Virus record (IMG/VR): IMGVR_UViG_3300042367_000228 | Location: 308,017-372,016 of that record | Reading direction: 5' to 3' (one strand) | Length of the DNA: 64,000 nucleotides | In this document: positions 15,502 to 54,283 of the stretch, piece by piece | How positions within the stretch are numbered: the stretch's first letter is position 1 | How the letters are laid out: each line of letters starts with the position of its first letter | Made by a program: the position numbers and the translations under genes | The notes under the pieces: generated by a model | Database searches by the model: none | Told to the model about the DNA's origin: nothing | What the model saw: only the letters and a program-made list of their open reading frames with translations

Positions 15502-15560
15502 AATACCATTTGTAAAGTCCTAAGTTTTGCGCTATAATAATGTTTTATGTAAGGAGCCAT

Positions 15561-15851: not shown

Positions 15852-16075
15852 TAGAAATATTAGCTAACCCACCTGGGATCAGTCGGAAGTTATATAATCG
15901 CGATGCAGCCTTTTTGTATATAATTACTCTAGTCCATAATGGACATGCAGACTGGCGATTTCCTACTCCAGACGAATGGGTTAACAGTCCTTTAGCGTAT
16001 ATGGCATGGCATCAAGGAAGAATTGATGACGATAGATTTTTCAGCTATCACATATACCCAGTGAGAGATATATGA
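15848..16075 (+). CDS. DUF1566/Lcl-like mini protein
   Basis: DWRFPT.DE...PVRD. Confidence 0.8.
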   Translation: MIEILANPPGISRKLYNRDAAFLYIITLVHNGHADWRFPTPDEWVNSPLAYMAWHQGRIDDDRFFSYHIYPVRDI

Positions 16076-16266
16076 TTAGATTTGCTAAACCATCCGGATG
16101 GTTAAACAACACAACTCCGGAAGCTGCTGACATGCACGTATTGTTTTATGAAGAAGACGGTTTAAAATACTGGAGGAGAGCAACTAACGAAGATTTTATT
16201 GACTTTGCAATACACGTTCCTGAATCATTGTTATCTAATACATGTATTCCGGTAAAGGATTTATGA
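16072..16266 (+). CDS. divergent DUF1566/Lcl-like mini protein
   Basis: EDG..YWR.AT.ED...PVKD. Confidence 0.65.
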   Translation: MIRFAKPSGWLNNTTPEAADMHVLFYEEDGLKYWRRATNEDFIDFAIHVPESLLSNTCIPVKDL

Positions 16267-16484
16267 GTATGCTTGAATTAGCCCCGCCATCAGAAAAAAT
16301 GACATATGACGAAGCAATTATGTATTGCTTTTGGTTAGAACACGATGGAAAGAAAGGCTGGAGAATGCCAACACATGAAGAATGGGCAAAGACTAAAGGC
16401 ATCATGGTGTACACTTGGAGACAGAATGATCACCGTACGATGATGGATACGATGCCTGTAGTACCGGTAAGAGGACAATTATGA
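16263..16484 (+). CDS. DUF1566/Lcl-like mini protein
   Basis: YDEAIMYC..GKKGWRMPT. Confidence 0.85.
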   Translation: MSMLELAPPSEKMTYDEAIMYCFWLEHDGKKGWRMPTHEEWAKTKGIMVYTWRQNDHRTMMDTMPVVPVRGQL

Positions 16485-16894
16485 AATGGTTTAACCGAAT
16501 ATTCAATCGCAATGTATATTTAAAATTTGACGTACCTACAAACCCTCCAGACAACAACAGAGTGCGTTATGTTGTAGGAGTCCCGGTTAATCACTATGAG
16601 AAAAAAATCATTGAAATCGTTTATACTGGAATACTATGTTCCAGTGATGATGAAGCAACGATGCATTTGTTTATGATGAGTAAGCATGATGGAAAGAGAG
16701 GATGGCGACTACCTACAATACACGAAGCTATATACTGTTCAGAGCTATCAGTAGTTAAGCATTTCTCTGATTGGAATTCACTTAGAGTTCCATTAGAATT
16801 AGTTTTAGTAAGAGATGTTACAGAAGATGAGTATAACTATTACAATGGACCTATAACACGTTTCTTTAAGCAGTTTGCGCAGTGGACTTATTGA
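16481..16894 (+). CDS. DUF1566/Lcl-like protein with N- and C-terminal extensions
   Basis: DEA.M...DGKRGWRLPT..E...LVRD. Confidence 0.75.
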   Translation: MKWFNRIFNRNVYLKFDVPTNPPDNNRVRYVVGVPVNHYEKKIIEIVYTGILCSSDDEATMHLFMMSKHDGKRGWRLPTIHEAIYCSELSVVKHFSDWNSLRVPLELVLVRDVTEDEYNYYNGPITRFFKQFAQWTY

Positions 16895-20401: not shown

Positions 20402-20614
20402 ATGATTGAATCAGGAATGTGTTCTAGTAATTTTCTAACATACGATGAAGCCTGGCTCTTCTGTATCACTTGCACACACTTCAAGAAATATGACTGGCGA
20501 ATGATGACACGACGTGAATTTATAGAGTATAAACCAAGAGAAAAATGGTTCGAAGTCACCGGCGTGTCACATTTAATAGCCCAGGTACTACCTGTGAGAG
20601 ATGTAAATGATTAG
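20402..20614 (+). CDS. DUF1566/Lcl-like mini protein
   Basis: YDEAWLFC..KYDWRM.T. Confidence 0.8.
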   Translation: MIESGMCSSNFLTYDEAWLFCITCTHFKKYDWRMMTRREFIEYKPREKWFEVTGVSHLIAQVLPVRDVND

Positions 20615-20858
20615 AAGAGATTTAGCTTACAATACACACTTAGAATACTTAGATTATTCTAACTATAAAATGGATTGGGACAGCGCATGGTTATACTGTG
20701 CTACCTGTACATATAAAGACATGTATGATTGGCGAATGCTTACTCCATATGAATTTCGTAATGATCTATACATACACAGCTGGCATGCCGCTTCACGAAA
20801 GGACAACTTTCCAGCATTTGTATTACCAGTTCGAGATAGAGGCCCCGCTGTAACATGA
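20607..20858 (+). CDS. DUF1566/Lcl-like mini protein
   Basis: WDSAWLYC..YDWRM.T..E...PVRD. Confidence 0.8.
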   Translation: MIRRDLAYNTHLEYLDYSNYKMDWDSAWLYCATCTYKDMYDWRMLTPYEFRNDLYIHSWHAASRKDNFPAFVLPVRDRGPAVT

Positions 20859-21073
20859 GCATAGAAATATTACCAACAATTGATAAACAATTTACATACG
20901 ATGAAGCAATGATGTACTGCTTTTTTCTTATTATAGACGGCAAAAAAGGATGGAGACTACCTACAAGAGAAGAATATAATTCTTCTGTTAAAATATGGGG
21001 TTGGCATCAAGATGATGGTAGAGCATCAACATCTGATCTTTTCAAAGTAACCCCAGTGCGGGACTCTGACTAA
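20855..21073 (+). CDS. DUF1566/Lcl-like mini protein
   Basis: YDEAMMYC..GKKGWRLPT.EE. Confidence 0.85.
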   Translation: MSIEILPTIDKQFTYDEAMMYCFFLIIDGKKGWRLPTREEYNSSVKIWGWHQDDGRASTSDLFKVTPVRDSD

Positions 21074-21144
21074 ATTACCATTTGCTTACTAATAAATATT
21101 TTGCTATAATATGTTTTTATTTACAAACCTTACGGAGTACGTTT

Positions 21145-21441
21145 ATGTCTACAGAACTTATTGAAAAATTAGCACACGCACCAGGTCCGCATTCAGCTTA
21201 CATTGAGGATTCTGAATTACGTGATATGGCAATTGTATGGGCAGTTGCAATTCGTAATGAAAATCGAGTATCGGGTACTGAATCAGAGTATTTAAAACTA
21301 ATGCGTGACATGATGGAAAATGAGCCATTTTTGTATAGACGATTTGCTGACTATCTAATCAATACTGTTGATGAAGGCACATATAAAGAAGCGTGGAGTC
21401 AAACAGCAGATAGAATTCGTAAAACATTACTACCTAAGTGA
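21145..21441 (+). CDS. hypothetical protein
   Basis: promoter cassette; start after GGAG. Confidence 0.65.
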   Translation: MSTELIEKLAHAPGPHSAYIEDSELRDMAIVWAVAIRNENRVSGTESEYLKLMRDMMENEPFLYRRFADYLINTVDEGTYKEAWSQTADRIRKTLLPK

Positions 21442-21448
21442 GGTAAGC

Positions 21449-21655
21449 ATGACACACGTAGAACATGGACCGAGATCCGAAAACAAAATGACTTATGATG
21501 AAGCAATAATGTATTGCTTCTGGTTTACTTACAATGGTAAGAAAGGATGGCGACTTCCGACCTTTCATGAATTTGTAGATGGGAACTCTTGGTATAAAGA
21601 TGCTGAGATTACTAAACGCAAGTGGTATGTAAAACCTGTGAGGGACATAAAATGA
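21449..21655 (+). CDS. DUF1566/Lcl-like mini protein
   Basis: family motif; start after GAGG. Confidence 0.85.
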   Translation: MTHVEHGPRSENKMTYDEAIMYCFWFTYNGKKGWRLPTFHEFVDGNSWYKDAEITKRKWYVKPVRDIK

Positions 21656-21969
21656 ACTTTGAAATAGCACCACGCGACAAATGGTTAGCAGAAACTCCTT
21701 ACGACCAAGGAGCGATGTATTGCCTATTCCTTGAAATTGATGGAAAGAAAGGATGGCGATTGCCAACTAATGAAGAAGCTGACATGTTAGTAAACACAGT
21801 AGATCCGGGTAATGATTTTGAGAATCCCGAAGTCCTTCCAGAGTTAGAGGAGTTTAATTCCTATTGGTTTGATCCTGATCATTGGGGGTTTTGGACACAC
21901 GAAGATACAGTTGACGACTTTGATCTTGACGAACTGTTTACTGCGATTCCAGTAAGGGACATAACATGA
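21652..21969 (+). CDS. DUF1566/Lcl-like protein with acidic insert
   Basis: MNFEIAP...YC..GKKGWRLPT.EE...PVRD. Confidence 0.8.
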   Translation: MNFEIAPRDKWLAETPYDQGAMYCLFLEIDGKKGWRLPTNEEADMLVNTVDPGNDFENPEVLPELEEFNSYWFDPDHWGFWTHEDTVDDFDLDELFTAIPVRDIT

Positions 21970-22259
21970 ATATTGAAATAGCACCAAAAACAACGGAGAT
22001 ACAAGCCACGTGGGATGAAGCAGTTATGTATTGTTTTTTTCTTGAAATAGATGGAAAGAAAGGATGGAGACTGCCTACTAAAGAGGAATTAGATTATATC
22101 TACCATTCAAAAAATGATTTCATTGATGCCTACTACTGGTCCTCTACTGAGTACAATGGCAGCAGCGCCTGGGGTCAGGTTTTCACCAGTGGCACCCAGT
22201 TCAGCTCCAGTAAGAACGGCGGCAGCTACTACGTTAGAGCAATAAGGGACATAATATGA
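21966..22259 (+). CDS. DUF1566/Lcl-like protein with DGR-type variable region
   Basis: WRLPTKEEL...YWSSTEY....AW.Q.F.SG........YVRAIR. Confidence 0.9.
   Translation: MNIEIAPKTTEIQATWDEAVMYCFFLEIDGKKGWRLPTKEELDYIYHSKNDFIDAYYWSSTEYNGSSAWGQVFTSGTQFSSSKNGGSYYVRAIRDII
22128..22250 (+). other. putative DGR variable region (VR) plus IMH-like 3' end
   Basis: 22 of 35 codons end in C and none in A; variable codons are all derivable from AAY by A-to-N change. Confidence 0.7.
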
Positions 22260-22333
22260 ACTTTGAAGTCGCACCTAACGGTGCTCGAACTGATAATTGC
22301 CATATGCAAAACTTAACTGGAGAACTACGATGA
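22256..22333 (+). pseudogene. truncated DUF1566-family remnant
   Basis: MNFEVAP start, stop after 25 aa. Confidence 0.5.
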
Positions 22334-22806
22334 GAAAATCCCTATCACATAAAGAAATCCTAATACTAAAACTCAATAATCTTTTAGCTACTTCTGAATC
22401 ACTCGAAGACAAACTCGTAACCGAGAATAATCAATGGCAATGCCGTGCAACAGTCCTACGCAGCGATATTCAAAATTTGATTGACTATGTAGGCTGGTCG
22501 GTAGAAGAGAATAATATGAATATTGAAATAGCACCAAAATCTGCCGAGGAGTCATGTAGTTGGGATACTGCACGAACATATTGTTTATTTCTTAACTTTG
22601 ATGGAAAAACTGATTGGCGACTTCCAACAAAAGAAGAACTAAATCAAATCTATGAATCAGATAATGATTTTCGTAGTGGTCGATACTGGGCTTCTAATGA
22701 ACAAAGTGTAGATACTGCTTGGAGTCAAAGTTTTGAAAATGGTAGCAGATACCCTAACTTTAAGTTCCACGGTGGCCTATACGTTAGACCAGTAAGGGAC
22801 TTATGA
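22330..22806 (+). CDS. N-terminal helical domain fused to DUF1566/Lcl-like domain (internal start 22516)
   Basis: MNIEIAPK...DWRLPTKEEL...YWAS.E....AW.Q.F.NG...YVRPVR. Confidence 0.8.
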   Translation: MRKSLSHKEILILKLNNLLATSESLEDKLVTENNQWQCRATVLRSDIQNLIDYVGWSVEENNMNIEIAPKSAEESCSWDTARTYCLFLNFDGKTDWRLPTKEELNQIYESDNDFRSGRYWASNEQSVDTAWSQSFENGSRYPNFKFHGGLYVRPVRDL

Positions 22807-23069
22807 TTATTGATTATAAGATTGATCGTGCTCCGTCACGTATAGTAAACAACTATGAAGAGGCTTGGCTGTATTGCCTTACCTGTAATCATGATGGACA
22901 TAATGATTGGAGGTTACCTACTGTAGACGAATGGCAATATTCGTCTACAAACACAATGCCTTTAGAAGCTTATTATGAAAACAATTATTTCTTTAAAGTT
23001 GAACCGGCTATGCAGAATAAGGCAGTTCCAGTACGTGAAGTAAAATATTCTTTACAAATCAACAAATAA
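22803..23069 (+). CDS. DUF1566/Lcl-like mini protein
   Basis: YEEAWLYC..GHNDWRLPT. Confidence 0.85.
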   Translation: MIIDYKIDRAPSRIVNNYEEAWLYCLTCNHDGHNDWRLPTVDEWQYSSTNTMPLEAYYENNYFFKVEPAMQNKAVPVREVKYSLQINK

Positions 23070-29371: not shown

Positions 29372-29632
29372 ATGATTAAGTACGCTAACAACTTGTCTGA
29401 AGATAGGTTTCAATCAGGTCCATTTAAACCTAAACACAAAATGTCAATTGATGAAGCAGTGATGTTTGTTACGTTTTATGAGGAAGACGGCATTAAAGGA
29501 TGGCGTTTTCCAACAGAACAAGAATCCATTGATAACCTAGAACTTACAGGTTGTTGGTATCAAGAAGATTTAAACACTAGCTGGCCACCTGATGAGTGTT
29601 ATTTTGTACGTCCAGTTAAGGACATTGATTAA
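29372..29632 (+). CDS. DUF1566/Lcl-like mini protein
   Basis: IDEA.M...DG.KGWRFPT.QE...PVKD. Confidence 0.8.
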   Translation: MIKYANNLSEDRFQSGPFKPKHKMSIDEAVMFVTFYEEDGIKGWRFPTEQESIDNLELTGCWYQEDLNTSWPPDECYFVRPVKDID

Positions 29633-31280: not shown

Positions 31281-31616
31281 ATGGCAAACTATCTTTTAGT
31301 AGAAGTAGACACTAACGACGGCGACTATGTAACTGCATTTAATCCAATCAGTGACACCGCGTTAGAGAACGTTAAGTTACTAATTGAAAAGATTAAAGAA
31401 AATCCTAATCGTCATAACTTCCCATACGAGCATGATGATACTCAGGTTTACGATTTGTATGCAGATCTAAACGAATATGGATCAGTAGTTGATCAAGATA
31501 TTGCGATTGACACATTTATTGATTATGTACCATCTACTGAATATGGGTTTCATAAAGTAACACGAGTTGAACTGTATGATGTAGGACATGTTGACGGATT
31601 GTTATACAAGAAATGA
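31281..31616 (+). CDS. hypothetical protein
   Basis: promoter cassette; DTNDGDYVT. Confidence 0.65.
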   Translation: MANYLLVEVDTNDGDYVTAFNPISDTALENVKLLIEKIKENPNRHNFPYEHDDTQVYDLYADLNEYGSVVDQDIAIDTFIDYVPSTEYGFHKVTRVELYDVGHVDGLLYKK

Positions 31617-31840
31617 TTGAACTTGGCTATGAATCCAACAGAATGATGTCATATGATGAAGCAGTCATGTACTGCTTCTTCTATTCTCAAGATGGCAAGA
31701 AGGGATGGCGTATGCCAACAGGGGATGAGTACGATGAATATTATGAACTTACCAGCAGCTGGTATCAAGATGACACCTTAAAAGACGATCCTGATGAAAC
31801 ATGGCTAGTAATCCCAGTGAGAGATATAAATGACAATTGA
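31613..31840 (+). CDS. DUF1566/Lcl-like mini protein
   Basis: YDEAVMYC..GKKGWRMPT. Confidence 0.85.
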   Translation: MIELGYESNRMMSYDEAVMYCFFYSQDGKKGWRMPTGDEYDEYYELTSSWYQDDTLKDDPDETWLVIPVRDINDN

Positions 31841-32051
31841 AATCGGACCTCGTGTATCTACTCCTATCCATTATGATGAAGCACTGCTTTATTGTATGAC
31901 TTTATCTTACAACGGATACTACGATTGGCGTTTGCCAGTTGCCAGCGAAGCAATTTTTGAATTTGCAATATGGGTTGATGAGAATGGTATATTATTTGCA
32001 AAATCGCATCCATATGCAAAGTATCCTGCTATTCCGGTACGAGATATATAA
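31830..32051 (+). CDS. DUF1566/Lcl-like mini protein
   Basis: YDEALLYC..YYDWRLP. Confidence 0.85.
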   Translation: MTIEIGPRVSTPIHYDEALLYCMTLSYNGYYDWRLPVASEAIFEFAIWVDENGILFAKSHPYAKYPAIPVRDI

Positions 32052-32117
32052 ACTTCTTTACAACCCAACGACACTTTGCTATAATATGTTTTTACTTAAA
32101 CACACGCGGAGCGCACT

Positions 32118-32555
32118 ATGCCAAACTATGTAAGCAACAGAGCTATTATTAGACACTCTGATCCAGCTAAACTTGCACTACTTGACACTGCATATCAAGA
32201 ACGCAACTTGTTCAATACTATCCTACCATGTCCTGAAGGATTACTTAACACACCATCCGGTCGTTATGCTGATCCAGTAAAGCAAGCTGATATGGAAAAA
32301 CGCCAAGATGAAAATTATAAGCAATTTGGTTACAGCACAGATTATCAATGGCGTGTAGAAAATTGGGGTACAAAATGGGAAGCTATTACACATGAACAAG
32401 GTCCATTGTACAAAGACAGTGACGGCGAGATTGTATTAGAGTTTGAAACTGCATGGGCTCCACCTACTGGCATTTACAAAGCATTACGCGAACAAGGATA
32501 CACAGTAGATTACGATTGGAGTGAGGAATGGGAAACGTTAATTGATGAGGACTAA
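32118..32555 (+). CDS. DUF1281/YubB ferredoxin-like domain protein
   Basis: MPN...N; WR.ENWGTKW; FETAWAPP. Confidence 0.75.
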   Translation: MPNYVSNRAIIRHSDPAKLALLDTAYQERNLFNTILPCPEGLLNTPSGRYADPVKQADMEKRQDENYKQFGYSTDYQWRVENWGTKWEAITHEQGPLYKDSDGEIVLEFETAWAPPTGIYKALREQGYTVDYDWSEEWETLIDED

Positions 32556-32613
32556 TATGAAACATTTAGTATTTGTAATGATCAGTTTACTACAATCCCT
32601 GTGAGATCTATTA

Positions 32614-32826
32614 ATGGCAATTGAGATTGGTAAACAATTTCCAAATCTAGTAACGATTGATGAAGCCGTTATGATTGCCTTTATGACCCCAGGATGGCGG
32701 CTTCCTACAGAACAAGAGTACATTGACCATTACGAGAGCTTAAAGTTTTGTTGGGATCAATCAGATGTAGAACAGTCAAATCCAAACATAAGAAACGGCT
32801 ATCTTAAATTAGTGAGAGATTGCTAA
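32614..32826 (+). CDS. DUF1566/Lcl-like mini protein
   Basis: IDEA.M..GWRLPT.QE...LVRD. Confidence 0.8.
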   Translation: MAIEIGKQFPNLVTIDEAVMIAFMTPGWRLPTEQEYIDHYESLKFCWDQSDVEQSNPNIRNGYLKLVRDC

Positions 32827-32853
32827 GGCCCCGCTGTACGCGTAGGAGGAATT

Positions 32854-33102
32854 ATGATCGAAGTTAATGCGCCATGTACTATTCAACTTGGTATTCCGAG
32901 TGAAAACCCAATGACATATGACGAAGCCGTTTTGTACTGTTTCTTTTATAATCAAGAGGGAAGTACAGGATGGCGAATGCCGACAGATATTGAGTGGCAA
33001 CGCTATGCTCCAGATATTAGTCCGTGGGCGTTAGGTGATAACGACGACTATTTACATATGATAGATACCTTTTATGTTGCACTTCCAGTACGTGATATAT
33101 AA
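32854..33102 (+). CDS. DUF1566/Lcl-like mini protein
   Basis: YDEAVLYC..GWRMPT..E...PVRD. Confidence 0.85.
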   Translation: MIEVNAPCTIQLGIPSENPMTYDEAVLYCFFYNQEGSTGWRMPTDIEWQRYAPDISPWALGDNDDYLHMIDTFYVALPVRDI

Positions 33103-45317: not shown

Positions 45318-45746
45318 ATGTCAAAGGCACACACTAAAGAAATTAGTATCTATTTAGAAGATGTCCAATGGATCGATCTACGTTATTTTAGATCGTGGTT
45401 AGAGAAACATGATGCATCTGAAGCAGCAACAATGCATCAAATCGTTGATAAGTTATGGCATGGAGATACTGACATCAATTGGAGATCCATGCCTGCAATC
45501 AAACAATGGCTTATGACTATTGAACATGATGTTGCAACAAAATTGTATGATTTAATTGAACACTTGCAAGATAGGGTGTTAGATACAGATGTACTAACAC
45601 CTAAAGAAATCTATGGTTGGGAAATTAATGATACAGCTATAGAACACACCCCTAAACACCTTAAGTTGGTTGTTAGCAATTACTTTAGGCCTCTCGAAAG
45701 AATTGATCAGCCTGCAAAGCCTGACCCAGTATTAACTTTGGTATAA
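45318..45746 (+). CDS. hypothetical protein
   Basis: promoter cassette. Confidence 0.65.
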   Translation: MSKAHTKEISIYLEDVQWIDLRYFRSWLEKHDASEAATMHQIVDKLWHGDTDINWRSMPAIKQWLMTIEHDVATKLYDLIEHLQDRVLDTDVLTPKEIYGWEINDTAIEHTPKHLKLVVSNYFRPLERIDQPAKPDPVLTLV

Positions 45747-45815
45747 TTACCACTTGCTTACCAGTGCATAGTATGTTATACTATGCACTTACTAACAACA
45801 ACTGCGGAGCGCACT

Positions 45816-45974
45816 ATGCAATACACACGTGAATATCTAATTAGATTAATCGATCGTAGCTACTCTTTGATTCAAGAGCCTGGGTTGTATTCAGATGCTG
45901 AACAAATAGAATTGCTTGATGATTTGCAAGATGCAATTGATGCCGAAGTTGAAATTGCAGATACCTGGGAGTAA
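45816..45974 (+). CDS. small acidic protein
   Basis: promoter cassette; start after GGAGCG. Confidence 0.6.
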   Translation: MQYTREYLIRLIDRSYSLIQEPGLYSDAEQIELLDDLQDAIDAEVEIADTWE

Positions 45975-45976
45975 TC

Positions 45977-46252: not shown

Positions 46253-46265
46253 CTAAAAGGAACAC

Positions 46266-46511: not shown

Positions 46512-46567
46512 CAAATATACGGCGTAGTAGTGATTTCTACTACGCCATCCCTCTTTAAGGAACTATC

Positions 46568-46765
46568 ATGCACTTTATAACATTAAAAAGAGTAGTCAAT
46601 AAATCAACAGTACAAGTAGACACATTTGAAATAGACATTAGAGTAAAAGACATTGTAGCATTTCATGATGGCCTGATTGTAGTAGGCGCCCATCAGTTCC
46701 ATGTAATTGAATCAAGAAGAGACATCCACGATAAAATTCGTAAAGCAGATACAACATGGGAATAA
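46568..46765 (+). CDS. hypothetical protein
   Basis: AAGGA RBS; V.ES..DI..KI. Confidence 0.6.
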   Translation: MHFITLKRVVNKSTVQVDTFEIDIRVKDIVAFHDGLIVVGAHQFHVIESRRDIHDKIRKADTTWE

Positions 46766-46917
46766 TTCCGACTAACCCGCCACCGAGCATGCCACTGCAG
46801 ACATTGCAAAGTTCATATTTTTCAAGTCCTGTGATTAGCAACAGCCATATGCAAGAGTTAAGGACAGGACTTAGCGAACAAATTATTAAGCCAGTACTTA
46901 AATGGGCAGGTAGAACG

Positions 46918-47145
46918 ATGTTAAACTTAGACCTAGCTCCTAGGTCACAAAACAAAATGTCATTTGACGAAGCTCAAATGTATATTCTCTTTTGTAAACA
47001 CAATGGATACAAGAACTGGAGACTTCCAACGCGTGAAGAATGGGAAACTATTAACGGTTGGGAGACACCTGTATGGTTAGTTGAAAAGGACAACGTAGTA
47101 ACGGATAAAGACTGGTATGCACAACCAGTACGGGACAAGAAATGA
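46918..47145 (+). CDS. DUF1566/Lcl-like mini protein, array 1
   Basis: FDEA.MY..GYKNWRLPT.EE...PVRD; longer in-frame ORF from 46756. Confidence 0.8.
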   Translation: MLNLDLAPRSQNKMSFDEAQMYILFCKHNGYKNWRLPTREEWETINGWETPVWLVEKDNVVTDKDWYAQPVRDKK

Positions 47146-47384
47146 TAGAGCTAGCGCCACATGAGCTATGGAAGTATGACGTAAACAAACATGAAGCTAG
47201 GCTGTACATATTCATGCTTAAAGGCTATAGAATGGGTACATTAGGAGAGATGCAATCATTAATCGACGCTATACGAGAAGTTGATCATGAAATGTGGGAC
47301 GCATGGACACTAGATGCAATAGATAGCGACGCTATACCAGACGACGAAACCGGAACAGCTATACCACTGAGAGATATAACATGA
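47142..47384 (+). CDS. divergent DUF1566/Lcl-like mini protein, array 2
   Basis: MIELAP..EA.LY..GYRM.T..E...PLRD. Confidence 0.75.
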   Translation: MIELAPHELWKYDVNKHEARLYIFMLKGYRMGTLGEMQSLIDAIREVDHEMWDAWTLDAIDSDAIPDDETGTAIPLRDIT

Positions 47385-47623
47385 TAGAATATGGAAAGAA
47401 ATCAGAAAACGATTTAAACTACGATGCGGCATTTATGTATTGCTTTTGGCATGAGCCAGTGGGCACTTGGAGGCTTCCGACTGAGCAGGAATACTTCCAA
47501 AAGATGCGACTAAAACACCCAAGTAGTATAATTCCCACTTGGTATGAAGATAGAGATCAGCTTGCAGAGAAAGTACATCAACAACCTGCTAAAATGCGAG
47601 TAGTGCCTGTACGATCGCTATGA
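47381..47623 (+). CDS. DUF1566/Lcl-like mini protein, array 3
   Basis: family motif. Confidence 0.8.
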   Translation: MIEYGKKSENDLNYDAAFMYCFWHEPVGTWRLPTEQEYFQKMRLKHPSSIIPTWYEDRDQLAEKVHQQPAKMRVVPVRSL

Positions 47624-47877
47624 CCCAGGTTAGTTACTATGCTAATAATATAAGGTTTCACCATTTGATTGAAGTAGCTCCAACGTCTAATGAAATGATG
47701 ACGTACGACCATGCTAAGATGTATATCATGTTCTATGAACACAATGGACATAGAGATTGGAGGTTGCCTACGTTACAAGAATGGCTAAGCCATAATCCGC
47801 CATTGATAGGGTGGGATGATCACGGAGAACATATTAGTGATATAGTTCGTTATGTAACCCCAGTAAGAGACCTATGA
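47620..47877 (+). CDS. DUF1566/Lcl-like mini protein, array 4
   Basis: family motif. Confidence 0.8.
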   Translation: MTQVSYYANNIRFHHLIEVAPTSNEMMTYDHAKMYIMFYEHNGHRDWRLPTLQEWLSHNPPLIGWDDHGEHISDIVRYVTPVRDL

Positions 47878-48101
47878 AACTTGAACTAGCTCCTCCATCT
47901 ATTCAACTACACAGAGATGAAGCATTCCTATATGTTTGGACGTGTACACACAACAACAAGTATGACTGGCGTCTGCCTACCCTACATGAATCAAGCAAAA
48001 ATAGTCTTACTGGCTGGAATGAATATGACTTATATGTATTTGCACATGAGATATCATACGACCCAATCTATTGGACAATTACCCCAGTGAGAGACTTATG
48101 A
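47874..48101 (+). CDS. DUF1566/Lcl-like mini protein, array 5
   Basis: family motif. Confidence 0.85.
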   Translation: MKLELAPPSIQLHRDEAFLYVWTCTHNNKYDWRLPTLHESSKNSLTGWNEYDLYVFAHEISYDPIYWTITPVRDL

Positions 48102-48313
48102 TTGAATTAGCTCCAGTATCTACAGAAAGGATGACCTATGACAATGCTAAATTGTACATCCTGTTCTATGAATATAATGGCTATAGAGATTGGCGTCTGC
48201 CTACATTCACTGAATGGATCACCCGCGACGATGTATATGGGTGGGATGATACAGAACCATCAATTGATTATGGTCCAAAACTTCGTGTTGTAACCCCAGT
48301 GAGAGACTTATGA
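48098..48313 (+). CDS. DUF1566/Lcl-like mini protein, array 6
   Basis: family motif. Confidence 0.85.
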   Translation: MIELAPVSTERMTYDNAKLYILFYEYNGYRDWRLPTFTEWITRDDVYGWDDTEPSIDYGPKLRVVTPVRDL

Positions 48314-48591
48314 TTGAAATAGCCCCAAGATTCGCACAACGTATGACATACGACGAAGCCATATTAAACTTATTCATGTTTGTACATAATGGAAAGAAAG
48401 ACTGGCGCATGCCTACCGAATACGAATACTACTACGGTACCGCCCGAGCTATAGAGAAGTCGTGGCATCGCGAAAAAGTAGATGAGTTTACTAACTGGTA
48501 CTTAACCCCTGTGAGAGATGTCAAATTTGTTTACATACCCAGCATAACGTGTTATAATAAAGACATACTGTTTAATAAGAGATACAGATGA
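48310..48591 (+). CDS. DUF1566/Lcl-like mini protein, array 7
   Basis: family motif with C-terminal tail. Confidence 0.8.
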   Translation: MIEIAPRFAQRMTYDEAILNLFMFVHNGKKDWRMPTEYEYYYGTARAIEKSWHREKVDEFTNWYLTPVRDVKFVYIPSITCYNKDILFNKRYR

Positions 48592-48848
48592 TAGAACTAG
48601 CACCTAAAGAACTATGGCTTGAACAATCTACACAAAACGAAGCATTGATGCACATATTCTTCCAAAAGGGTTATCGCTTGCCTACATTTGAAGAACTACC
48701 TCAAATGAGACAAATACTAAACCGAGAAGTAATATTAGTGTGGACTGAAAACACAGTACGTGACCCATTGTTTGAAATGTTTGATCTAGATAACAGGTCA
48801 TTGCTTCCGTTTAAAGCTAAAGTTATTCCAGTGAGGGATGTATGTTAG
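48588..48848 (+). CDS. divergent DUF1566/Lcl-like mini protein, array 8
   Basis: MIELAP..GYRLPT.EE...PVRD. Confidence 0.75.
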   Translation: MIELAPKELWLEQSTQNEALMHIFFQKGYRLPTFEELPQMRQILNREVILVWTENTVRDPLFEMFDLDNRSLLPFKAKVIPVRDVC

Positions 48849-49087
48849 AGTTTGGACCGAGATTAGAAAGAGGTATCAACTCGTATGAGTTAATATCTCA
48901 AGGCATTAACTCATATGATGATGCGTTTTTGGCCTGTTTAACATGTGACCATAGGGGATATTATGATTGGCGTTTACCAACCAGAAAAGAGTATTTTGAC
49001 GAGGATTTAATGTCTGGAGCGTGGTATGAAAGCAAGCCATCATGGCGCAGAGCATGGTATGTAGTACCAGTGAGGGATAAATGTTAG
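48842..49087 (+). CDS. DUF1566/Lcl-like mini protein, array 9
   Basis: family motif; internal duplicated GINSY. Confidence 0.8.
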   Translation: MLEFGPRLERGINSYELISQGINSYDDAFLACLTCDHRGYYDWRLPTRKEYFDEDLMSGAWYESKPSWRRAWYVVPVRDKC

Positions 49088-49299
49088 AAATAGGCCCATG
49101 CTCATCTCACACACTAATATTAGATGAAGCCTGGCTATACTGTATTACACTAGAACATAACGGACATAGAGATTGGAGATTGCCTACTTGGCAGGAAATG
49201 AATAGCCATCAAATGCGAAACTGTAGAGGCTGGACGAACCCGTACTATCTTAGTTCTAGTCTTAGCCAAATGCTTGTTTACCCAGTGAGAGATTTATGA
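49081..49299 (+). CDS. DUF1566/Lcl-like mini protein, array 10
   Basis: family motif. Confidence 0.85.
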   Translation: MLEIGPCSSHTLILDEAWLYCITLEHNGHRDWRLPTWQEMNSHQMRNCRGWTNPYYLSSSLSQMLVYPVRDL

Positions 49300-49514
49300 T
49301 TGAAACAGGATACCAATCAGCACAACAATTAGAGTATGACGAAGCACTGCTGTATTGTTATACCTGTACCGATAGACAAAAATATGACTGGCGTATGCCT
49401 ACATCAAAAGAACACAACCACTTCCCAGCTACTACTTGGCATATTGATAGAATACCCGATATGGTCCTATGGATGGAACTTTATGTAATTCCAGTGAGAG
49501 ATAAAGATGTTTGA
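49296..49514 (+). CDS. DUF1566/Lcl-like mini protein, array 11
   Basis: family motif. Confidence 0.85.
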   Translation: MIETGYQSAQQLEYDEALLYCYTCTDRQKYDWRMPTSKEHNHFPATTWHIDRIPDMVLWMELYVIPVRDKDV

Positions 49515-49734
49515 ACAAGCACCTATGATCAAGTATGTTACTATAGACGAAGCTGAACTGTACACGATGACGCTAACCTATAACAATCACTACGATTGGA
49601 GGCTCCCTACTATAATAGAACTACGTCACGCTACGCCTGATATATCCAAACGCCCAGTATGTTGGCATCAGCATGATCTTATGGGTCAGTTGGATGATAT
49701 GAAATGCGCATTGATCCCAGTGAGAACTATATGA
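49507..49734 (+). CDS. DUF1566/Lcl-like mini protein, array 12
   Basis: family motif. Confidence 0.85.
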   Translation: MFEQAPMIKYVTIDEAELYTMTLTYNNHYDWRLPTIIELRHATPDISKRPVCWHQHDLMGQLDDMKCALIPVRTI

Positions 49735-49967
49735 TTGAATTAGGACCACATGACGACTGCTTTGTAACGATAGACGAAGCAATGTTATACATCTATACCC
49801 TAACCCACAACAACAAATATGACTGGCGTTTTCCGACAGCAGCAGAATATGATGACACTGATGAGATGCCTCCTATGACCTGGCATAGCACCTGGTATGA
49901 CTATACCGTACATTACGCTAATGATTCAGAACGAGCAGTTTACCCAGTGAGAGATATAGATGATTGA
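49731..49967 (+). CDS. DUF1566/Lcl-like mini protein, array 13
   Basis: family motif. Confidence 0.85.
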   Translation: MIELGPHDDCFVTIDEAMLYIYTLTHNNKYDWRFPTAAEYDDTDEMPPMTWHSTWYDYTVHYANDSERAVYPVRDIDD

Positions 49968-50184
49968 CATACACACAAACAGTAAACTGGTCTCATACAC
50001 AGAAGCCGAACTATATGCTTGGACTTGTACCAATCAAGGCTATTATGATTGGCGATTACCTAACTTTGATGACCCTATACCATTCTTTATGCAAACCGAA
50101 TGCTGGATTTCCTATACGTTGCCATATACTGATTACTTCGCAGAAGGCAGAACAATAGTAGTAGTGAGAGATAAAGATGATTGA
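49960..50184 (+). CDS. DUF1566/Lcl-like mini protein, array 14
   Basis: family motif. Confidence 0.8.
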   Translation: MIDIHTNSKLVSYTEAELYAWTCTNQGYYDWRLPNFDDPIPFFMQTECWISYTLPYTDYFAEGRTIVVVRDKDD

Positions 50185-50401
50185 AGCTAAACTTGTATCA
50201 CACTCAAAATCGTGTGAAGAAGCTGAACTTTACATTTGGACACTAACACACGAAAACAAGTACGATTGGCGTTTTCCAACACGCGATGAATGCGTAAAAC
50301 TTACAGGTGGTCCAATATGGTGTGATTCACTAATCAAAAGTCCATATATAGAGCCACTCGACCGCTTTTATTTAATAGCAGTGAGAGATACAGATGCTTG
50401 A
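50177..50401 (+). CDS. DUF1566/Lcl-like mini protein, array 15
   Basis: family motif. Confidence 0.8.
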   Translation: MIEAKLVSHSKSCEEAELYIWTLTHENKYDWRFPTRDECVKLTGGPIWCDSLIKSPYIEPLDRFYLIAVRDTDA

Positions 50402-50597
50402 GTTTGCTAGTCAATCCCATTTACTCCCTTATTACGAAGCTTGGCTTTACTGCGTTACTTGTACTCACAACAACAAGTATGACTGGCGATATCCTACTAT
50501 TGGAGATGTATGGGAGCATCCGCAGATTCTCAAGAATAATTTTACACCACCATACGACTTGTTCTACATAACCCCAGTGAGAACTCAAGATGATTGA
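50394..50597 (+). CDS. DUF1566/Lcl-like mini protein, array 16
   Basis: family motif. Confidence 0.85.
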   Translation: MLEFASQSHLLPYYEAWLYCVTCTHNNKYDWRYPTIGDVWEHPQILKNNFTPPYDLFYITPVRTQDD

Positions 50598-50811
50598 ACA
50601 AGCTACTACTAAACGGCGTGACTTCTCATATGACGAAGCTTGGCTATACGTAGCCACTTGCACCCATAAAAAGAAATACGATTGGCGCATGCCTACTATG
50701 CTAGAACACTTTGGAAGAAAGTATCGACCTCTGATACTTGGACAATGGTATGAGCGAGACTATTTTGAACACCGAACATACGTAACCCCTGTGAGAACAA
50801 ACGATGATTGA
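50590..50811 (+). CDS. DUF1566/Lcl-like mini protein, array 17
   Basis: family motif. Confidence 0.85.
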   Translation: MIEQATTKRRDFSYDEAWLYVATCTHKKKYDWRMPTMLEHFGRKYRPLILGQWYERDYFEHRTYVTPVRTNDD

Positions 50812-51001
50812 AGCAGCCCCTATGTCACATTTAATGCCATACAACGATGCATTCTTATATGCGATAACTTGCACCCATAACGACAAGTATGACTGGCGAA
50901 TGCCAACTGCTGGCGACTTCTCCAATAATGTTAAACTAAGAACAACTGATCAACGCCGCAACATACAATTTTGTCCTATCAGAGGATCAAGAGATGATTG
51001 A
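50804..51001 (+). CDS. DUF1566/Lcl-like mini protein, array 18
   Basis: family motif, short variable segment. Confidence 0.8.
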   Translation: MIEAAPMSHLMPYNDAFLYAITCTHNDKYDWRMPTAGDFSNNVKLRTTDQRRNIQFCPIRGSRDD

Positions 51002-51209
51002 ACTAGCCCCACGAACACCGGAACTTATGGACTATGACCTAGCTTGGCTATACTGTATTACACTTGGCCACAATGACTGTTATGACTGGCGTATACCAAC
51101 AGCCGACGAATATAAGAGTTCTCGGTGTAGTTTGTCTTGGCATGAAACTAGATATATGTTCCTAGATCCATTATATCATGTAACCCCAGTGAGAACTAAC
51201 AATGATTGA
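50994..51209 (+). CDS. DUF1566/Lcl-like mini protein, array 19
   Basis: family motif. Confidence 0.85.
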   Translation: MIELAPRTPELMDYDLAWLYCITLGHNDCYDWRIPTADEYKSSRCSLSWHETRYMFLDPLYHVTPVRTNND

Positions 51210-51426
51210 ACAAGCCCCTAAGACTACTGACAAATTTGATGCCTATAGTGCCGAAATTTACATATACACTTGCACACACGACAACAAGTATGACTGGCGA
51301 ATGCCTACTATAAGAGAATGTGCAGACTTGATTATAACCGGTAGTTGGAATGCTAGTGATTTTAACCATATGACAATGTCCCCACATAGGTGGAAGGTAA
51401 CCCCTGTGAGAACTAACAATGATTGA
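51202..51426 (+). CDS. DUF1566/Lcl-like mini protein, array 20
   Basis: family motif. Confidence 0.85.
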   Translation: MIEQAPKTTDKFDAYSAEIYIYTCTHDNKYDWRMPTIRECADLIITGSWNASDFNHMTMSPHRWKVTPVRTNND

Positions 51427-51652
51427 ATATGGCCTTAAATTAGAAAAAGTCGTAGCCTATGACACAGCTTGGTTATACTGCGCTACACTAACACACGACA
51501 ACAAGTACGACTGGAGATTACCAACCAACACAGAATGGCATAAGTTCTTTAGACAAGACCCAGTTGCACCAAACTATTCACGGGTTTGGTATAAAGATAG
51601 ACTCACACCATATCAGTGGTATTGCTTACCGGTGAGAACTAACAATGATTGA
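51419..51652 (+). CDS. DUF1566/Lcl-like mini protein, array 21
   Basis: family motif. Confidence 0.85.
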   Translation: MIEYGLKLEKVVAYDTAWLYCATLTHDNKYDWRLPTNTEWHKFFRQDPVAPNYSRVWYKDRLTPYQWYCLPVRTNND

Positions 51653-51857
51653 ACTTGCTATACGACCTCAAGAAGAAATGGATTACGATACTGCATGGCT
51701 GTATTGTCTAACACTTGACTATAACGGACATAAAGATTGGCGATTGCCTACAGGAACTGAATATACTACTACGGATGCGCTATCATTTAGTTGGTTTGAA
51801 GAAAGAAAAACCGGCGAAAGATGGGTATGCCAACCAGTAAGGACTATAAATGATTGA
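51645..51857 (+). CDS. DUF1566/Lcl-like mini protein, array 22
   Basis: family motif. Confidence 0.85.
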   Translation: MIELAIRPQEEMDYDTAWLYCLTLDYNGHKDWRLPTGTEYTTTDALSFSWFEERKTGERWVCQPVRTIND

Positions 51858-52077
51858 ACTAGCCCCAGAAGCAAAAGAATATATGAACTATGACACCGCC
51901 TGGCTATACTGCGCTACGCTAACCCGCAACAACAAGTATAACTGGCGATTACCGACTCATAGAGAATACAACAGATCCCTACTTATAATGAATTGGTTTG
52001 AAGATAGATATCGTATCTTGGGATTGGGCGATGCGCGTGACCTTCATGTAACCCCAGTAAGGACTATAAATGATTGA
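51850..52077 (+). CDS. DUF1566/Lcl-like mini protein, array 23
   Basis: family motif. Confidence 0.85.
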   Translation: MIELAPEAKEYMNYDTAWLYCATLTRNNKYNWRLPTHREYNRSLLIMNWFEDRYRILGLGDARDLHVTPVRTIND

Positions 52078-52285
52078 ACTAGCACTACAAACACAACAAG
52101 AAATAACTTATGATCTAGCTTGGCTATACTGTATTACACTTGACTACAATGGCCATAAGGACTGGCGACTACCAACAGCTAACGAATATAAAAGTTTTCA
52201 GTTTACATCAGCTTGGCATGAAGGTAGATTTCAAGTTCTACAAGAATATTATGTACTCTATGTAATCCCAGTGAGAACCTTATGA
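52070..52285 (+). CDS. DUF1566/Lcl-like mini protein, array 24
   Basis: family motif. Confidence 0.85.
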   Translation: MIELALQTQQEITYDLAWLYCITLDYNGHKDWRLPTANEYKSFQFTSAWHEGRFQVLQEYYVLYVIPVRTL

Positions 52286-52554
52286 TCGAACTTGCTCCCT
52301 ACTTATACCAAACGAAACAAGACGATGCGTTCTTATTCATTATTACTTGCACACACAAAGACAAATACGACTGGCGTTTCCCTACTATGTTTGAAATCTT
52401 ATATAGTGGTATGTTTGAGAATTTAGATCCATGGAGATCTGATAATGTATATCCTAAACTTATTCACTTGATTGACTTGACATACACAGCTGTTCCGGTA
52501 AGAGATTATCCTTTTCCAACTAGACCTCCCGGACTTTATGTACAAAAGCAATGA
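52282..52554 (+). CDS. DUF1566/Lcl-like mini protein, array 25
   Basis: family motif with C-terminal tail. Confidence 0.8.
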   Translation: MIELAPYLYQTKQDDAFLFIITCTHKDKYDWRFPTMFEILYSGMFENLDPWRSDNVYPKLIHLIDLTYTAVPVRDYPFPTRPPGLYVQKQ

Positions 52555-52617
52555 ATAAGTAGCTTATCCATAAAAAAGCAACATAATTGTAGCAAAACAA
52601 AAAGAAAACAACTTATC

Positions 52618-53325: not shown

Positions 53326-53393
53326 ACAAACCATTTGACAGTCATACTATACTATAGTATAATATGCACTTACTATAAAACAACGGAGCAACT

Positions 53394-54266: not shown

Positions 54267-54283
54267 TTATCAGTTGCATACTA

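What the first reader, a model, noticed from the sequence alone, without database searches (positions are those of the whole stretch)
46918..52554. 25-gene coupled array with conserved nucleotide junctions acting as RBS and likely crossover site
Seen: each gene ends in CC(A/T)GT(G/A)AG(A/G) (PVR) followed within a few bases by the next ATG overlapping the stop; junctions recur nearly exactly (CCAGTAAGGACTATAAATGATTGAACTAGC at 51834 and 52054; ACCCCAGTGAGAGACTTATGA ending at 48101 and 48313). I found no sigma70 promoter between ~45.8 kb and the array end. Neighbours are most alike, and alternate similarity (51645~52070, 51419~51850) suggests two-gene duplications. Inference: an accordion expanding by unequal crossover at the junction, which corresponds to the IMH-equivalent 3' end of the DGR-type member, so retro-insertion is an alternative.
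Basis: partly seen in the sequence, partly recalled or inferred. Interest (0 to 1): 0.8.

Follow-up and report, generated by a model that had tools for sequence, protein, structure and literature searches.

The report
Phage array of mini-lectin genes
A 372-kb uncultured lake-water phage carries 25 back-to-back, overlapping small genes for tiny lectin-like binding proteins. The short conserved seam between the genes serves both as the start signal for the next gene and as the place where whole genes are gained, lost or swapped between related phages.

Summary
The array is real. Window 46756-52554 (+) holds 25 intact genes of 65-129 aa, and all 24 internal junctions have the start codon overlapping the previous stop. 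They belong to a 48-gene family in this window: a trimmed C-type-lectin-like Lcl_C/DUF1566 domain with a conserved N-terminal half and a hypervariable C-terminal half.

Codon use at the closing Pro-Val-Arg motif goes beyond protein constraint. Arg is AGA/AGG in 23/25 units, against 7/25 at the WRLPT motif. The bias drops in family members with no gene directly downstream (p=0.009), which fits a weak ribosome-binding site for coupled translation.

Three related metagenomic haplotypes carry 25, 26 and 31 units. All nine mapped whole-gene indels and one single-gene replacement have their switch points inside the seam, sharing only 0-18 nt of identity there. So the crossover-site idea is supported.

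The array is not a currently amplifying accordion. Paralogs are old (at most 58% identical), orthologs are under purifying selection, and the same haplotype recurs unchanged in other samples. I found no reverse transcriptase and no adenine-biased repeat, so a DGR or retro-insertion origin is unsupported. What the proteins bind is unknown.

The parts
45742..45834 (+). Last full copy of the phage's repeated early-promoter cassette (TTGC..N17..TATACT, leader, GGAG) before the array. Probable start of the transcript that enters the array.
   Evidence: Repeat families D1, D9, D10; alignment with the other cassettes.
46756..52554 (+). The array: 25 tandem mini-Lcl_C (DUF1566-like) genes. Every start overlaps the previous stop.
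   Evidence: All units intact. HMM scores are 47-106 bits against the family profile.
46756..47145 (+). Unit 1 (129 aa), with a 54-aa N-terminal extension. The domain begins near 46918. Its start overlaps the stop of the upstream gene 46568-46765.
   Evidence: The extension is conserved in L001 and L004, with pN well below pS.
47142..48591 (+). Units 2-7 (47142-47384, 47381-47623, 47620-47877, 47874-48101, 48098-48313, 48310-48591), all joined by 4-nt ATGA overlaps.
48530..48558 (+). Promoter-like element inside the C-terminal tail of unit 7 (TTTACA, 17 nt, TG-TATAAT), about 30 nt upstream of the unit 8 start.
   Evidence: 11/12 match. Aligns with the phage promoter cassettes. 99/101 nt identical in L001 and L004.
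48588..49967 (+). Units 8-13 (48588-48848, 48842-49087, 49081-49299, 49296-49514, 49507-49734, 49731-49967).
49960..50184 (+). Unit 14. In L001 and L004 this slot holds a different paralog (a one-gene replacement). The dense differences span 49968-50162, bounded by the seam on both sides.
   Evidence: 48-49% differences against 1-5% in the flanking units.
50177..51426 (+). Units 15-20 (50177-50401, 50394-50597, 50590-50811, 50804-51001, 50994-51209, 51202-51426), joined by 8-nt ATG(A/C)TTGA overlaps.
51419..51857 (+). Units 21-22, present only in the window's haplotype. Contig depth drops over this stretch in two other lake metagenomes.
   Evidence: Depth is 15.5 against about 30-90 (X8) and 1.6-3 against about 4-19 (X12).
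51850..52554 (+). Units 23-25 (51850-52077, 52070-52285, 52282-52554). Unit 24 is absent from L004. Unit 25 has a 17-aa tail after the PVRD motif.
51180..51221 (+). Example of the seam: ..CC(A/T)GT(G/A)AG(A/G)..N..ATG(A)TTGAA... It encodes the last strand (Pro-Val-Arg) of one protein, a weak Shine-Dalgarno-like GTGAGR, the stop, and Met-Ile-Glu of the next protein.
   Evidence: Repeat family D20; codon statistics; duplex energies; switch points.
11275..11999 (+). Satellite cluster of 3 family genes.
15066..16894 (+). Satellite cluster of 7 family genes.
20402..23069 (+). Satellite cluster of 8 family genes (9 HMM matches; two fall in the gene 21652-21969). It includes two full-length Lcl_C domains, 21966-22259 and 22516-22806.
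   Evidence: Pfam Lcl_C scores 49.9 and 60.1 bits against a cut-off of 34.9.
29393..29632 (+). Solitary family gene.
31613..33102 (+). Satellite cluster of 4 family genes.

Best explanation
The locus is a lineage-specific multigene family in the host-RNA-polymerase-transcribed (early-type) region of a 372-kb uncultured freshwater jumbo phage.

Each unit encodes a roughly 70-75 aa cytoplasmic protein that is a trimmed C-type-lectin-like Lcl_C/DUF1566 domain. The N-terminal half is a conserved scaffold (MIE.AP...YDEA.LY...DWRLPT). A hypervariable stretch of 25-45 residues follows, and a Pro-Val-Arg strand closes the fold by pairing with the N-terminal strand.

The 25 genes are read from one or two transcripts: from promoters at about 45.3/45.75 kb, plus a probable internal promoter at 48530-48558. 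They are translated as a coupled chain. Every start overlaps the preceding stop, and the Val-Arg codons are held as GTG-AGR, a weak Shine-Dalgarno-like element 7-12 nt upstream of the next ATG.

The same seam of about 27 nt is the only stretch at which short-homology recombination has been seen to add, remove or replace whole genes without making chimeras. This is the kind of recombination documented in T4, at 6-10 bp microhomologies. Related phages therefore carry different subsets of an old repertoire: 25, 26 and 31 units.

Shown: the anatomy, the fold, the codon bias, the copy-number differences, the switch points and the purifying selection.

Inferred: that GTGAGR acts in translation initiation; that recombination, rather than selection alone, focuses events on the seam; and that the proteins are a panel of binders for host factors (host takeover or counter-defence).
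For: - Anatomy and overlaps.
- Family size: 49 HMM matches in 48 genes in the window.
- Fold: AlphaFold2 model with pLDDT 90.9, N-terminal strand 2-4 and C-terminal strand 70-72. The best matches are Lcl_C/DUF1566/FGE models at TM 0.65-0.83 and minimal poxvirus C-type lectin-like domains at TM 0.62-0.66. Two long paralogs pass Pfam's Lcl_C cut-off.
- Real genes: ortholog dN/dS is 0.22-0.23 in the scaffold half and 0.40-0.59 in the variable half.
- Nucleotide-level constraint: the Arg of PVR is AGR in 23/25 units, against 7/25 at WRLPT (Fisher p=6e-6) and 31% in background genes. Val is GTG in 17/24, against 16% in background.
- Internal control: AGR in 30/35 units followed by a start within 30 nt, against 6/13 terminal units (p=0.009).
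- Anti-SD duplex: mean -4.7 kcal/mol, against -2.6 at random positions (p=1e-7) and -5.5 for promoter-led genes.
- Copy number: 25, 31 and 26 units in syntenic arrays between the same flanking genes.
- Switch points: nine indels switch within -16..+10 of the ATG (one at +24..+36), with 0-18 nt shared. The unit 14 replacement is bounded at 49968 and 50162.
- T4 precedent for 6-10 bp microhomology amplifications and deletions: bioRxiv 10.1101/2022.04.14.488369.
- The same seam occurs in an unrelated lake-phage contig that has 47 HMM matches (46 distinct genes) in 20 kb.
- Early-type promoters with sigma70 consensus flank and precede the array.
Against: - The Shine-Dalgarno complementarity is weak. 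It is mostly GUGA pairing with UCAC of the extended 16S tail, and the host 16S is unknown.
- The coupled-versus-terminal codon contrast could also arise if recombination homogenises seams only where two units abut.
- The WRLPT block is as conserved in DNA as the seam (mean pairwise identity 0.62-0.68 against about 0.6), yet none of the nine mapped indels switches there. The one apparent exception is the 118-aa fused double unit downstream of the L004/L009 array. Selection against chimeric proteins, rather than a mechanistic hot spot, may explain the focus on the seam.
- No expression data exist: no RNA run was listed.
- No ligand or partner is known. The homo-oligomer prediction gave no answer.
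- Only three distinct haplotypes were compared.
Confidence: 0.65

Rival explanations
1. Pure protein and overlap constraint. The seam is conserved only because it encodes the two terminal beta-strands of the fold (Met-Ile-Glu and Pro-Val-Arg) in two overlapping frames. Whole-gene indels end there only because any other event gives a misfolded chimera that is purged. On this view there is no special RBS or recombination role.
For: In the model the first and last strands are residues 2-4 and 70-72. The 8-nt overlap makes ATGATTGA dual-coding. The WRLPT block is equally conserved in DNA but carries no observed crossover.
Against: Synonymous choices are strongly skewed at PVR (AGR 92%, GTG 71%) but not at the equally invariant Arg of WRLPT (28% AGR). 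The skew weakens in units with no downstream start. The PVR codons lie upstream of the overlap, so dual coding does not explain them.
Confidence: 0.2
2. An active gene accordion. The array is currently expanding and contracting by unequal crossing-over under selection for dosage, as in poxvirus K3L or the T4 dmd-tifA amplifications.
For: Copy number differs among relatives. Two contig joints with sides of 79-112 nt lie exactly at seams in other lake metagenomes: 50585>51202 and 51414>50800. L001 units 9 and 10 are the most similar neighbouring pair.
Against: There are no near-identical copies: mean paralog identity is 37% and the maximum 58%. Median terminal branch length is 1.05 substitutions per site. 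The 25-unit haplotype is identical in L011, L012 and in contigs of runs X5 and X9. Each unit is under purifying selection as a distinct gene. The joints come from contigs about 88-90% identical, so they may be from other lineages.
Confidence: 0.1
3. DGR-type retro-insertion. The units, or their variable halves, are written by a reverse transcriptase from a template, with the seam playing the part of the IMH.
For: The fold is the one that DGRs diversify, and DUF1566 variable proteins are known DGR targets (papers listed). Variability is concentrated in the C-terminal half.
Against: No RT domain was found in the five ORFs of 300 aa or more that were scanned. None of 697 repeat pairs has at least 75% of mismatches at one base. 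Differences seen in populations are ordinary transitions of all kinds. Identical haplotypes across samples show no hypervariation. The variable halves differ in length, which DGR mutagenesis does not produce.
Confidence: 0.03
4. Assembly artefact: a mis-assembled or collapsed repeat in a metagenomic contig.
For: Short-read contigs break inside the array in several runs.
Against: The units are far too diverged to collapse. The same 10.9 kb is 100% identical in two independent IMG/VR contigs from different samples. Three haplotypes each recur in two or more assemblies.
Confidence: 0.02

Closest known systems
Lcl C-terminal domain / DUF1566 (Pfam PF07603), C-type-lectin-like / FGE-like fold
   Same: The WR(L/M)PT motif, the closing V-R-x-V-R-type strand and the predicted fold. 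Two paralogs in the window pass the Pfam cut-off. The ESM Atlas holds clusters of roughly 97-124 aa Lcl_C proteins whose members with a taxon record are viral (Uroviricota).
   Different: The array units are 65-93 aa after unit 1, against a 117-position domain model. The middle of the domain is cut down to a short variable stretch, and none of the nine array units scanned reaches the cut-off (best 22.7 bits against 34.9). They are stand-alone proteins in tandem arrays, not domains of large surface proteins.
DGR variable proteins with a C-type lectin fold (including DUF1566-type targets)
   Same: The same scaffold, with diversity concentrated in the C-terminal part that ends at the stop codon.
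   Different: Here the diversity is stored as dozens of germline paralogs of different lengths. There is no RT, no template repeat and no adenine bias.
T4 segmental amplifications and deletions at short homologies (dmd-tifA; Srikant et al., bioRxiv 10.1101/2022.04.14.488369)
   Same: Tandem gene gain and loss bounded by microhomologies of about 6-10 bp in a large lytic phage, involving small early accessory genes. The switch intervals here are 0-18 nt.
   Different: In T4 the copies are identical, recent, dosage-driven and have unique boundaries in each lineage. Here the copies are ancient and distinct, and the events reuse one conserved seam.
Poxvirus K3L gene accordion (my own knowledge; also discussed in the paper read) and giant-virus multigene families
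   Same: Viral tandem paralog arrays whose copy number changes between lineages and which are linked to host interaction.
   Different: Those are eukaryotic viruses with separately expressed genes. There is no shared translational-coupling seam, and in the K3L case the accordion was observed as recent amplification.
Translationally coupled operons with ATGA-type overlaps (general bacterial and phage genetics; my own knowledge)
   Same: Overlapping stop and start, with a Shine-Dalgarno-like element inside the end of the upstream gene.
   Different: A chain of 24 consecutive coupled junctions between paralogs, in which the coupling element is part of the conserved protein motif.

Membership tests
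Pfam Lcl_C / DUF1566 (PF07603) | Score at or above the curated gathering cut-off (34.9 bits) | tested here: not met
   The nine array units scanned score 13-23 bits or nothing. The feature is met by two longer paralogs elsewhere in the window, at 49.9 and 60.1 bits. These paralogs link the array to the family through the shared profile.
Pfam Lcl_C / DUF1566 (PF07603) | C-type-lectin-like / FGE-like fold | tested here: met
   Model pLDDT 90.9. The AFDB cluster hits with a name are almost all Lcl_C/DUF1566/FGE, and most of the top 30 have TM 0.55-0.75. Atlas structure hits have TM 0.72-0.83. PDB hits are C-type lectin-like domains, but with E of about 1 or more.
Pfam Lcl_C / DUF1566 (PF07603) | Conserved W-R-(L/M)-P-T motif and terminal V-R strand | tested here: met
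   R33 is invariant; W32, P35, T36, V70 and R71 are at least 90% conserved across 57 sequences.
Diversity-generating retroelement (DGR) target | A reverse transcriptase nearby | tested here: not met
   No RVT domain in the window's five ORFs of 300 aa or more that were scanned. The remaining 308 kb of the genome was not available.
Diversity-generating retroelement (DGR) target | A template repeat / variable repeat pair with adenine-specific mismatches | tested here: not met
   0 of 697 intra-window HSPs have at least 75% of mismatches at one base.
Diversity-generating retroelement (DGR) target | Hypervariation of the variable region within populations | tested here: not met
   Contigs of runs X5 and X9 are identical to the window, and the changes in X8 and X12 are of all kinds. 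Contigs drop rare variants, so this test is weak.
Gene accordion (recent tandem amplification) | Near-identical tandem copies | tested here: not met
   Maximum paralog identity is 58% in protein.
Gene accordion (recent tandem amplification) | Copy number differs between close relatives | tested here: met
   25, 26 and 31 units between the same flanking genes.
Gene accordion (recent tandem amplification) | Events bounded by short homologies | tested here: met
   Switch intervals of 0-18 nt at the seam.
Translationally coupled operon | Stop and start overlap at every junction | tested here: met
   24 of 24 junctions overlap by 4, 7 or 8 nt.
Translationally coupled operon | Shine-Dalgarno-like element in the upstream gene's end | tested here: inconclusive
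   The complementarity is weak but significant, and there is a codon bias conditional on a downstream start. The host 16S is unknown.
Translationally coupled operon | Downstream translation depends on upstream translation | not testable with these tools
   This needs reporter or Ribo-seq experiments. No RNA run was listed.
Integron-like cassette array | attC-type imperfect inverted repeats at cassette borders, and an integrase | tested here: not met
   Only two inverted repeats were found in the array, neither at a junction. No integrase was found among the ORFs scanned.

The most novel reading that the evidence does not exclude
The seam is a dedicated, triple-duty cassette joint: the structural strand codons, the coupling RBS with stop/start, and the recombination site. 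It lets freshwater phages shuffle a germline repertoire of minimal lectin-fold binders between genomes. This would be a combinatorial alternative to DGR mutagenesis on the very scaffold that DGRs diversify. The repertoire would work as a broad panel of inhibitors or sensors of host proteins, for example defence systems.
Probability: 0.25. Interest if true: 0.8.

Novelty: new variant of a known kind. Interest (0 to 1): 0.6.

Why it matters
About one sixth of this 64-kb early-type region is spent on 48 versions of one tiny binding fold. An unrelated lake phage packs 47 HMM matches (46 genes) into 20 kb, and the profile recovers 3,878 clusters at 50% identity across metagenomes.

If these are host-factor binders, they are a large, untapped set of small natural protein binders and candidate counter-defence proteins. 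The array also shows how a phage can keep a big paralog repertoire both expressed, through chain coupling, and evolvable, through whole-gene exchange at one short seam. That puts multigene families beside DGRs as a second route to diversity on the C-type lectin scaffold.

The evolutionary dynamics can be tested directly with long-read lake metagenomes.

Tried and rejected
- DNA and protein searches of the INPHARED phage collection found no relative of the array. PHROGs has no family for a unit.
- The search for related loci with the 25-unit alignment failed because it had no conserved 7-10 column stretch. I used exact-protein look-ups and the flanking ATPase instead.
- Thirty-two more distant loci of 7 kb or more (ATPase 44-68% identical) have no family member in the DNA held, up to 10 kb on each side of the ATPase. 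The array at this site is therefore lineage-specific, and those loci gave no extra haplotypes.
- I tested whether the mosaic of SNP density between haplotypes is phased with unit boundaries. The test was inconclusive: the heterogeneity statistic has no clear peak at zero offset.
- The paralog tree is poorly resolved (74 columns, 3 of 54 branches starred). It shows only that array units cluster more than chance, with 9 label changes against 17.7 in shuffles.
- The homotrimer prediction gave no answer, which is evidence neither for nor against.
- No RNA run was listed.
- An integron-like reading was rejected, as was a DGR reading.
- One DNA search pattern was malformed and was replaced.

Full report
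**What is there**

Window 46756-52554 (+) holds 25 consecutive intact ORFs. Unit 1 is 129 aa and the others are 65-93 aa. At each of the 24 internal junctions the start codon overlaps the previous stop: 11 by ATGA (4 nt), 2 by 7 nt and 11 by ATG(A/C)TTGA (8 nt). For units 6 and 13 the family-conserved Met-Ile-Glu start (48098, 49731) is used rather than the longer ORF listed.

The proteins align to a consensus MIE.AP..(7)..YDEA.LY..T.THN.KYDWRLPT..E..(variable, 25-45 aa)..V.PVRD. In that alignment A17, R33 and R71 are invariant, and W32, P35, T36, W49, P69 and V70 are nearly so.

The 9-mer CCWGTRAGR occurs 29 times in the window against 1.9 expected, and 17 of those close array units. Eight units carry variants of it, so "each gene" is an overstatement.

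**It is one family, much larger than the array**

A profile of the 25 units gives 49 matches in the window. All are on the + strand. Besides the array there are 3 matches at 11.3-12.0 kb, 7 at 15.1-16.9 kb, 9 at 20.4-23.1 kb, 1 at 29.4 kb and 4 at 31.6-33.1 kb. These 24 further matches fall in 23 genes, because two lie in the gene 21652-21969.

The array units give only sub-threshold Pfam hits to Lcl_C (DUF1566) and FGE-sulfatase. Two longer paralogs, 21966-22256 and 22516-22803, pass the Lcl_C cut-off at 49.9 and 60.1 bits against 34.9.

An AlphaFold2 model of unit 23, built from a 57-sequence family alignment, is confident (pLDDT 90.9, pTM 0.77). The first strand (residues 2-4) and the last (70-72, the Val-Arg strand) lie at the two ends of the chain. 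Structural matches are:
- Lcl_C/DUF1566/FGE models, TM 0.65-0.75 in AFDB clusters and 0.72-0.83 in the ESM Atlas;
- compact C-type lectin-like domains of poxvirus A33/A35, TM 0.62-0.66, at non-significant E-values.

The units are therefore trimmed, stand-alone C-type-lectin-like domains.

**Genomic setting**

The window is the last 64 kb of IMG/VR contig IMGVR_UViG_3300042367_000228 (372,016 nt). L011 and L012 are 100% identical to it over 43401-54300. The runs that hold the sequence are lake-water and freshwater metagenomes. There is no DNA match in the INPHARED phage collection.

The AAA ATPase just downstream (53394-54266) is 48% identical to proteins of PA5oct-like Pseudomonas jumbo phages, and also matches T4-like phages.

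The region is studded with about 25 copies of a conserved promoter cassette: TTGCAA or TTTACA, 17 nt, TATAAT with an upstream TG, a leader, then GGAG. This is the signature of genes transcribed by the host polymerase, that is, early-type genes.

The last full cassette before the array is at 45742-45834, and the next strong promoter is at 53335-53363. It matches 11 of 12 positions with a TG extension, aligns with the phage's own cassettes, and is 99/101 nt identical in two relatives whose genes otherwise differ by several per cent.

**Is the seam more than amino-acid constraint?**

The answer is yes.

- The Arg of Pro-Val-Arg is AGA/AGG in 23 of 25 units. The equally invariant Arg of WRLPT is AGR in 7 of 25 (Fisher p=6e-6), and background genes use AGR for 31% of Arg.
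- The Val is GTG in 17 of 24 units, against 16% in background genes.
- Across all 48 family genes, units whose Arg codon is followed by a start within 30 nt use AGR in 30 of 35 cases. Terminal units use it in 6 of 13 (p=0.009). GTG follows the same trend.
- Predicted pairing of the 18 nt upstream of each start with the 16S tail averages -4.7 kcal/mol. Random positions in the array average -2.6 (p=1e-7) and promoter-led genes -5.5.

The element is weak, mostly GUGA pairing with UCAC. That fits reinitiation by terminating ribosomes at overlapping stop/start codons. The inference that it works as a coupling RBS is reasonable but untested. Homogenisation of seams by recombination could give a similar codon pattern.

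**Does the array vary among relatives, and where?**

Exact-protein look-ups retrieved syntenic arrays between the same flanking genes, with the ATPase and a lytic transglycosylase downstream. L001 (also L002 and L003) has 31 units, two of them frameshifted. L004 (also L005, L009 and L010, the last two from a 358-kb contig) has 26 units plus a fused double unit further on.

Unit-by-unit comparison gives ten presence/absence differences and one replacement among the three haplotypes.

For the nine indels analysed, the shorter haplotype follows the left neighbour up to the seam and the right neighbour from the seam on. The switch interval lies between -16 and +10 of the downstream ATG in eight cases and at +24..+36 in one. 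Only 0-18 nt are shared, for example CCCAGTGAGAGA, AGTGAGAGA and ATGATTGAA.

Unit 14 is replaced by a different paralog of the same length. The differences are 48-49% there, against 1-5% in the flanking units. The dense differences start at 49968 and stop at 50162, again at the two seams.

The WRLPT block is as conserved in DNA as the seam, yet none of the nine mapped indels switches there. One fused double unit downstream of the L004/L009 array looks like the exception. Either the seam is mechanistically preferred or chimeras are purged.

Two units in different lineages (L001 unit 9 and L006 10001-10255) have a duplicated ..VIPVR.. tail, which looks like a scar of imprecise seam recombination.

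Short homologies of 6-10 bp bounding amplifications and deletions are documented for T4 (bioRxiv 10.1101/2022.04.14.488369).

**Not a currently breathing accordion**

- Paralogs average 37% protein identity, with a maximum of 58%. Terminal branches have a median of 1.05 substitutions per site.
- Similarity falls with distance only weakly (Spearman -0.29, p=2e-4). Supported sister pairs include 4/6, 12/13, 16/18 and 22/24.
- Orthologs between haplotypes differ by 1-9% in most units and are under purifying selection. dN/dS is 0.22-0.23 in the scaffold half and 0.40-0.59 in the variable half.
- The 25-unit haplotype is identical in two further assemblies and in contigs of runs dated 2016 and 2024.
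- In two other lake runs the contig depth drops over units 21-23. Two joints with sides of 79-112 nt fall exactly at seams, but they come from contigs only about 88-90% identical and are weak evidence.
- More distant loci of 7 kb or more (ATPase 44-68% identical) have no family member in the DNA held, up to 10 kb on each side of the ATPase. The array at this site therefore arose within this lineage.
- Array units cluster together on the family tree more than chance would give: 9 label changes against 17.7 in shuffles, 0 of 500 shuffles as low.

**DGR or retro-insertion**

There is no reverse-transcriptase domain in the window's five ORFs of 300 aa or more that were scanned. None of 697 internal repeat pairs has mismatches concentrated at one base. 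Population differences are of all substitution types. The variable halves differ in length. This alternative is not supported, although 308 kb of the genome could not be scanned.

**How widespread**

The 57-sequence profile finds 3,878 clusters (at 50% identity) with E of 1e-3 or better and 661 with E of 1e-10 or better. Many are stand-alone proteins of 67-90 aa matched end to end. Some are two-unit fusions. Others are large proteins of up to about 6,300 aa in which the domain recurs several to 17 times.

A contig from another lake (L006, 99.8 kb) gives 47 matches (46 distinct genes) in 20 kb. It has the same seam, CC(G/A)GTGAG(A/G)GAT(A/G)T followed by ATGATAGAA, and ATGA overlaps. I found no paper describing such arrays. 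DUF1566 appears in the phage literature only as a DGR target.

**Function**

Function is inferred only. The proteins are small and carry no hydrophobic leader. They are transcribed from early-type promoters. They are built on a ligand-binding fold, with the variation confined to one stretch, and each paralog is conserved across haplotypes. This is most simply read as a panel of binders for host molecules, serving host takeover or counter-defence. No partner was identified, and the oligomer prediction gave no answer.

**Verdict**

The RBS and crossover-site readings are supported by codon statistics and by comparative breakpoints. The ideas of an expanding accordion and of retro-insertion are not supported.

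The array is a new variant of known kinds: a viral multigene family, translational coupling and short-homology recombination, on a scaffold known from DGR targets.

Noticed in passing
window 19609-62318 (e.g. 28587-28676, 35215-35315, 45250-45337): About 25 copies of a conserved promoter-plus-leader cassette of roughly 90 nt: TTGCAA or TTTACA, 17 nt, TG-TATAAT(ATGTTTTTACTTAC), GGAG, ATG. There are two sub-types, TATAATATGTTTTT and TATACTATGCGCTT. They look like a regulon of early-type promoters.
   Followed up: partly
window 63857-64000: A perfect 16-nt tandem repeat (unit GCATAGCAAGCGCATA) runs to the end of the window. That is also the end of the 372,016-nt IMG/VR contig, so it may be a genome terminus or the point where assembly broke.
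   Followed up: no
window 25375-26160 (-) and 37956-38675 (-): Two HNH + NUMOD3 homing-endonuclease-like genes on the opposite strand, inside the otherwise + strand early region.
   Followed up: no
window 16926-17909 (+): A 327-aa ORF made of degenerate Ala/Glu/Gly/Val-rich repeats (copies 12-123 nt apart, mostly multiples of 12), with local GC of 45% and no Pfam hit. An ORF also lies on the opposite strand (16898-17695).
   Followed up: no
window 37595-37668 and 39840-39916: tRNA-Met (CAT) and tRNA-Arg (CCT, which reads AGG). AGR is the Arg codon class enforced at the array seams.
   Followed up: no
L004 11792-12148 and L009 17057-17413: A 118-aa gene that fuses the N-terminal half of one unit to a complete second unit (..DWRLPTHKEIAIQSKHKHTQDEAFLY..DWRFPT..). 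This is an apparent product of recombination inside units. It lies in a 2.5-kb stretch that is reduced to 0.84 kb in the window (52555-53393).
   Followed up: partly
L001 9204-9520: Two array units in this relative are frameshifted or truncated (53 and about 52 aa), so units can decay as well as be deleted.
   Followed up: partly
window 46519-46548: A 12-bp-stem hairpin between two small genes, about 200 nt upstream of the array. The scan called it a terminator on the - strand only. On the + strand it is followed by CCCTCTTTAAGG, not a T run.
   Followed up: no
window 46756-51200 compared with L001 and L004: Divergence between haplotypes is strongly mosaic from gene to gene. Against L001, units 2 and 4 differ by 0.8% and units 1 and 3 by 14.5% and 7.1%. 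Unit 24 has no synonymous or nonsynonymous differences from its L001 ortholog. This implies frequent recombination between lineages.
   Followed up: partly
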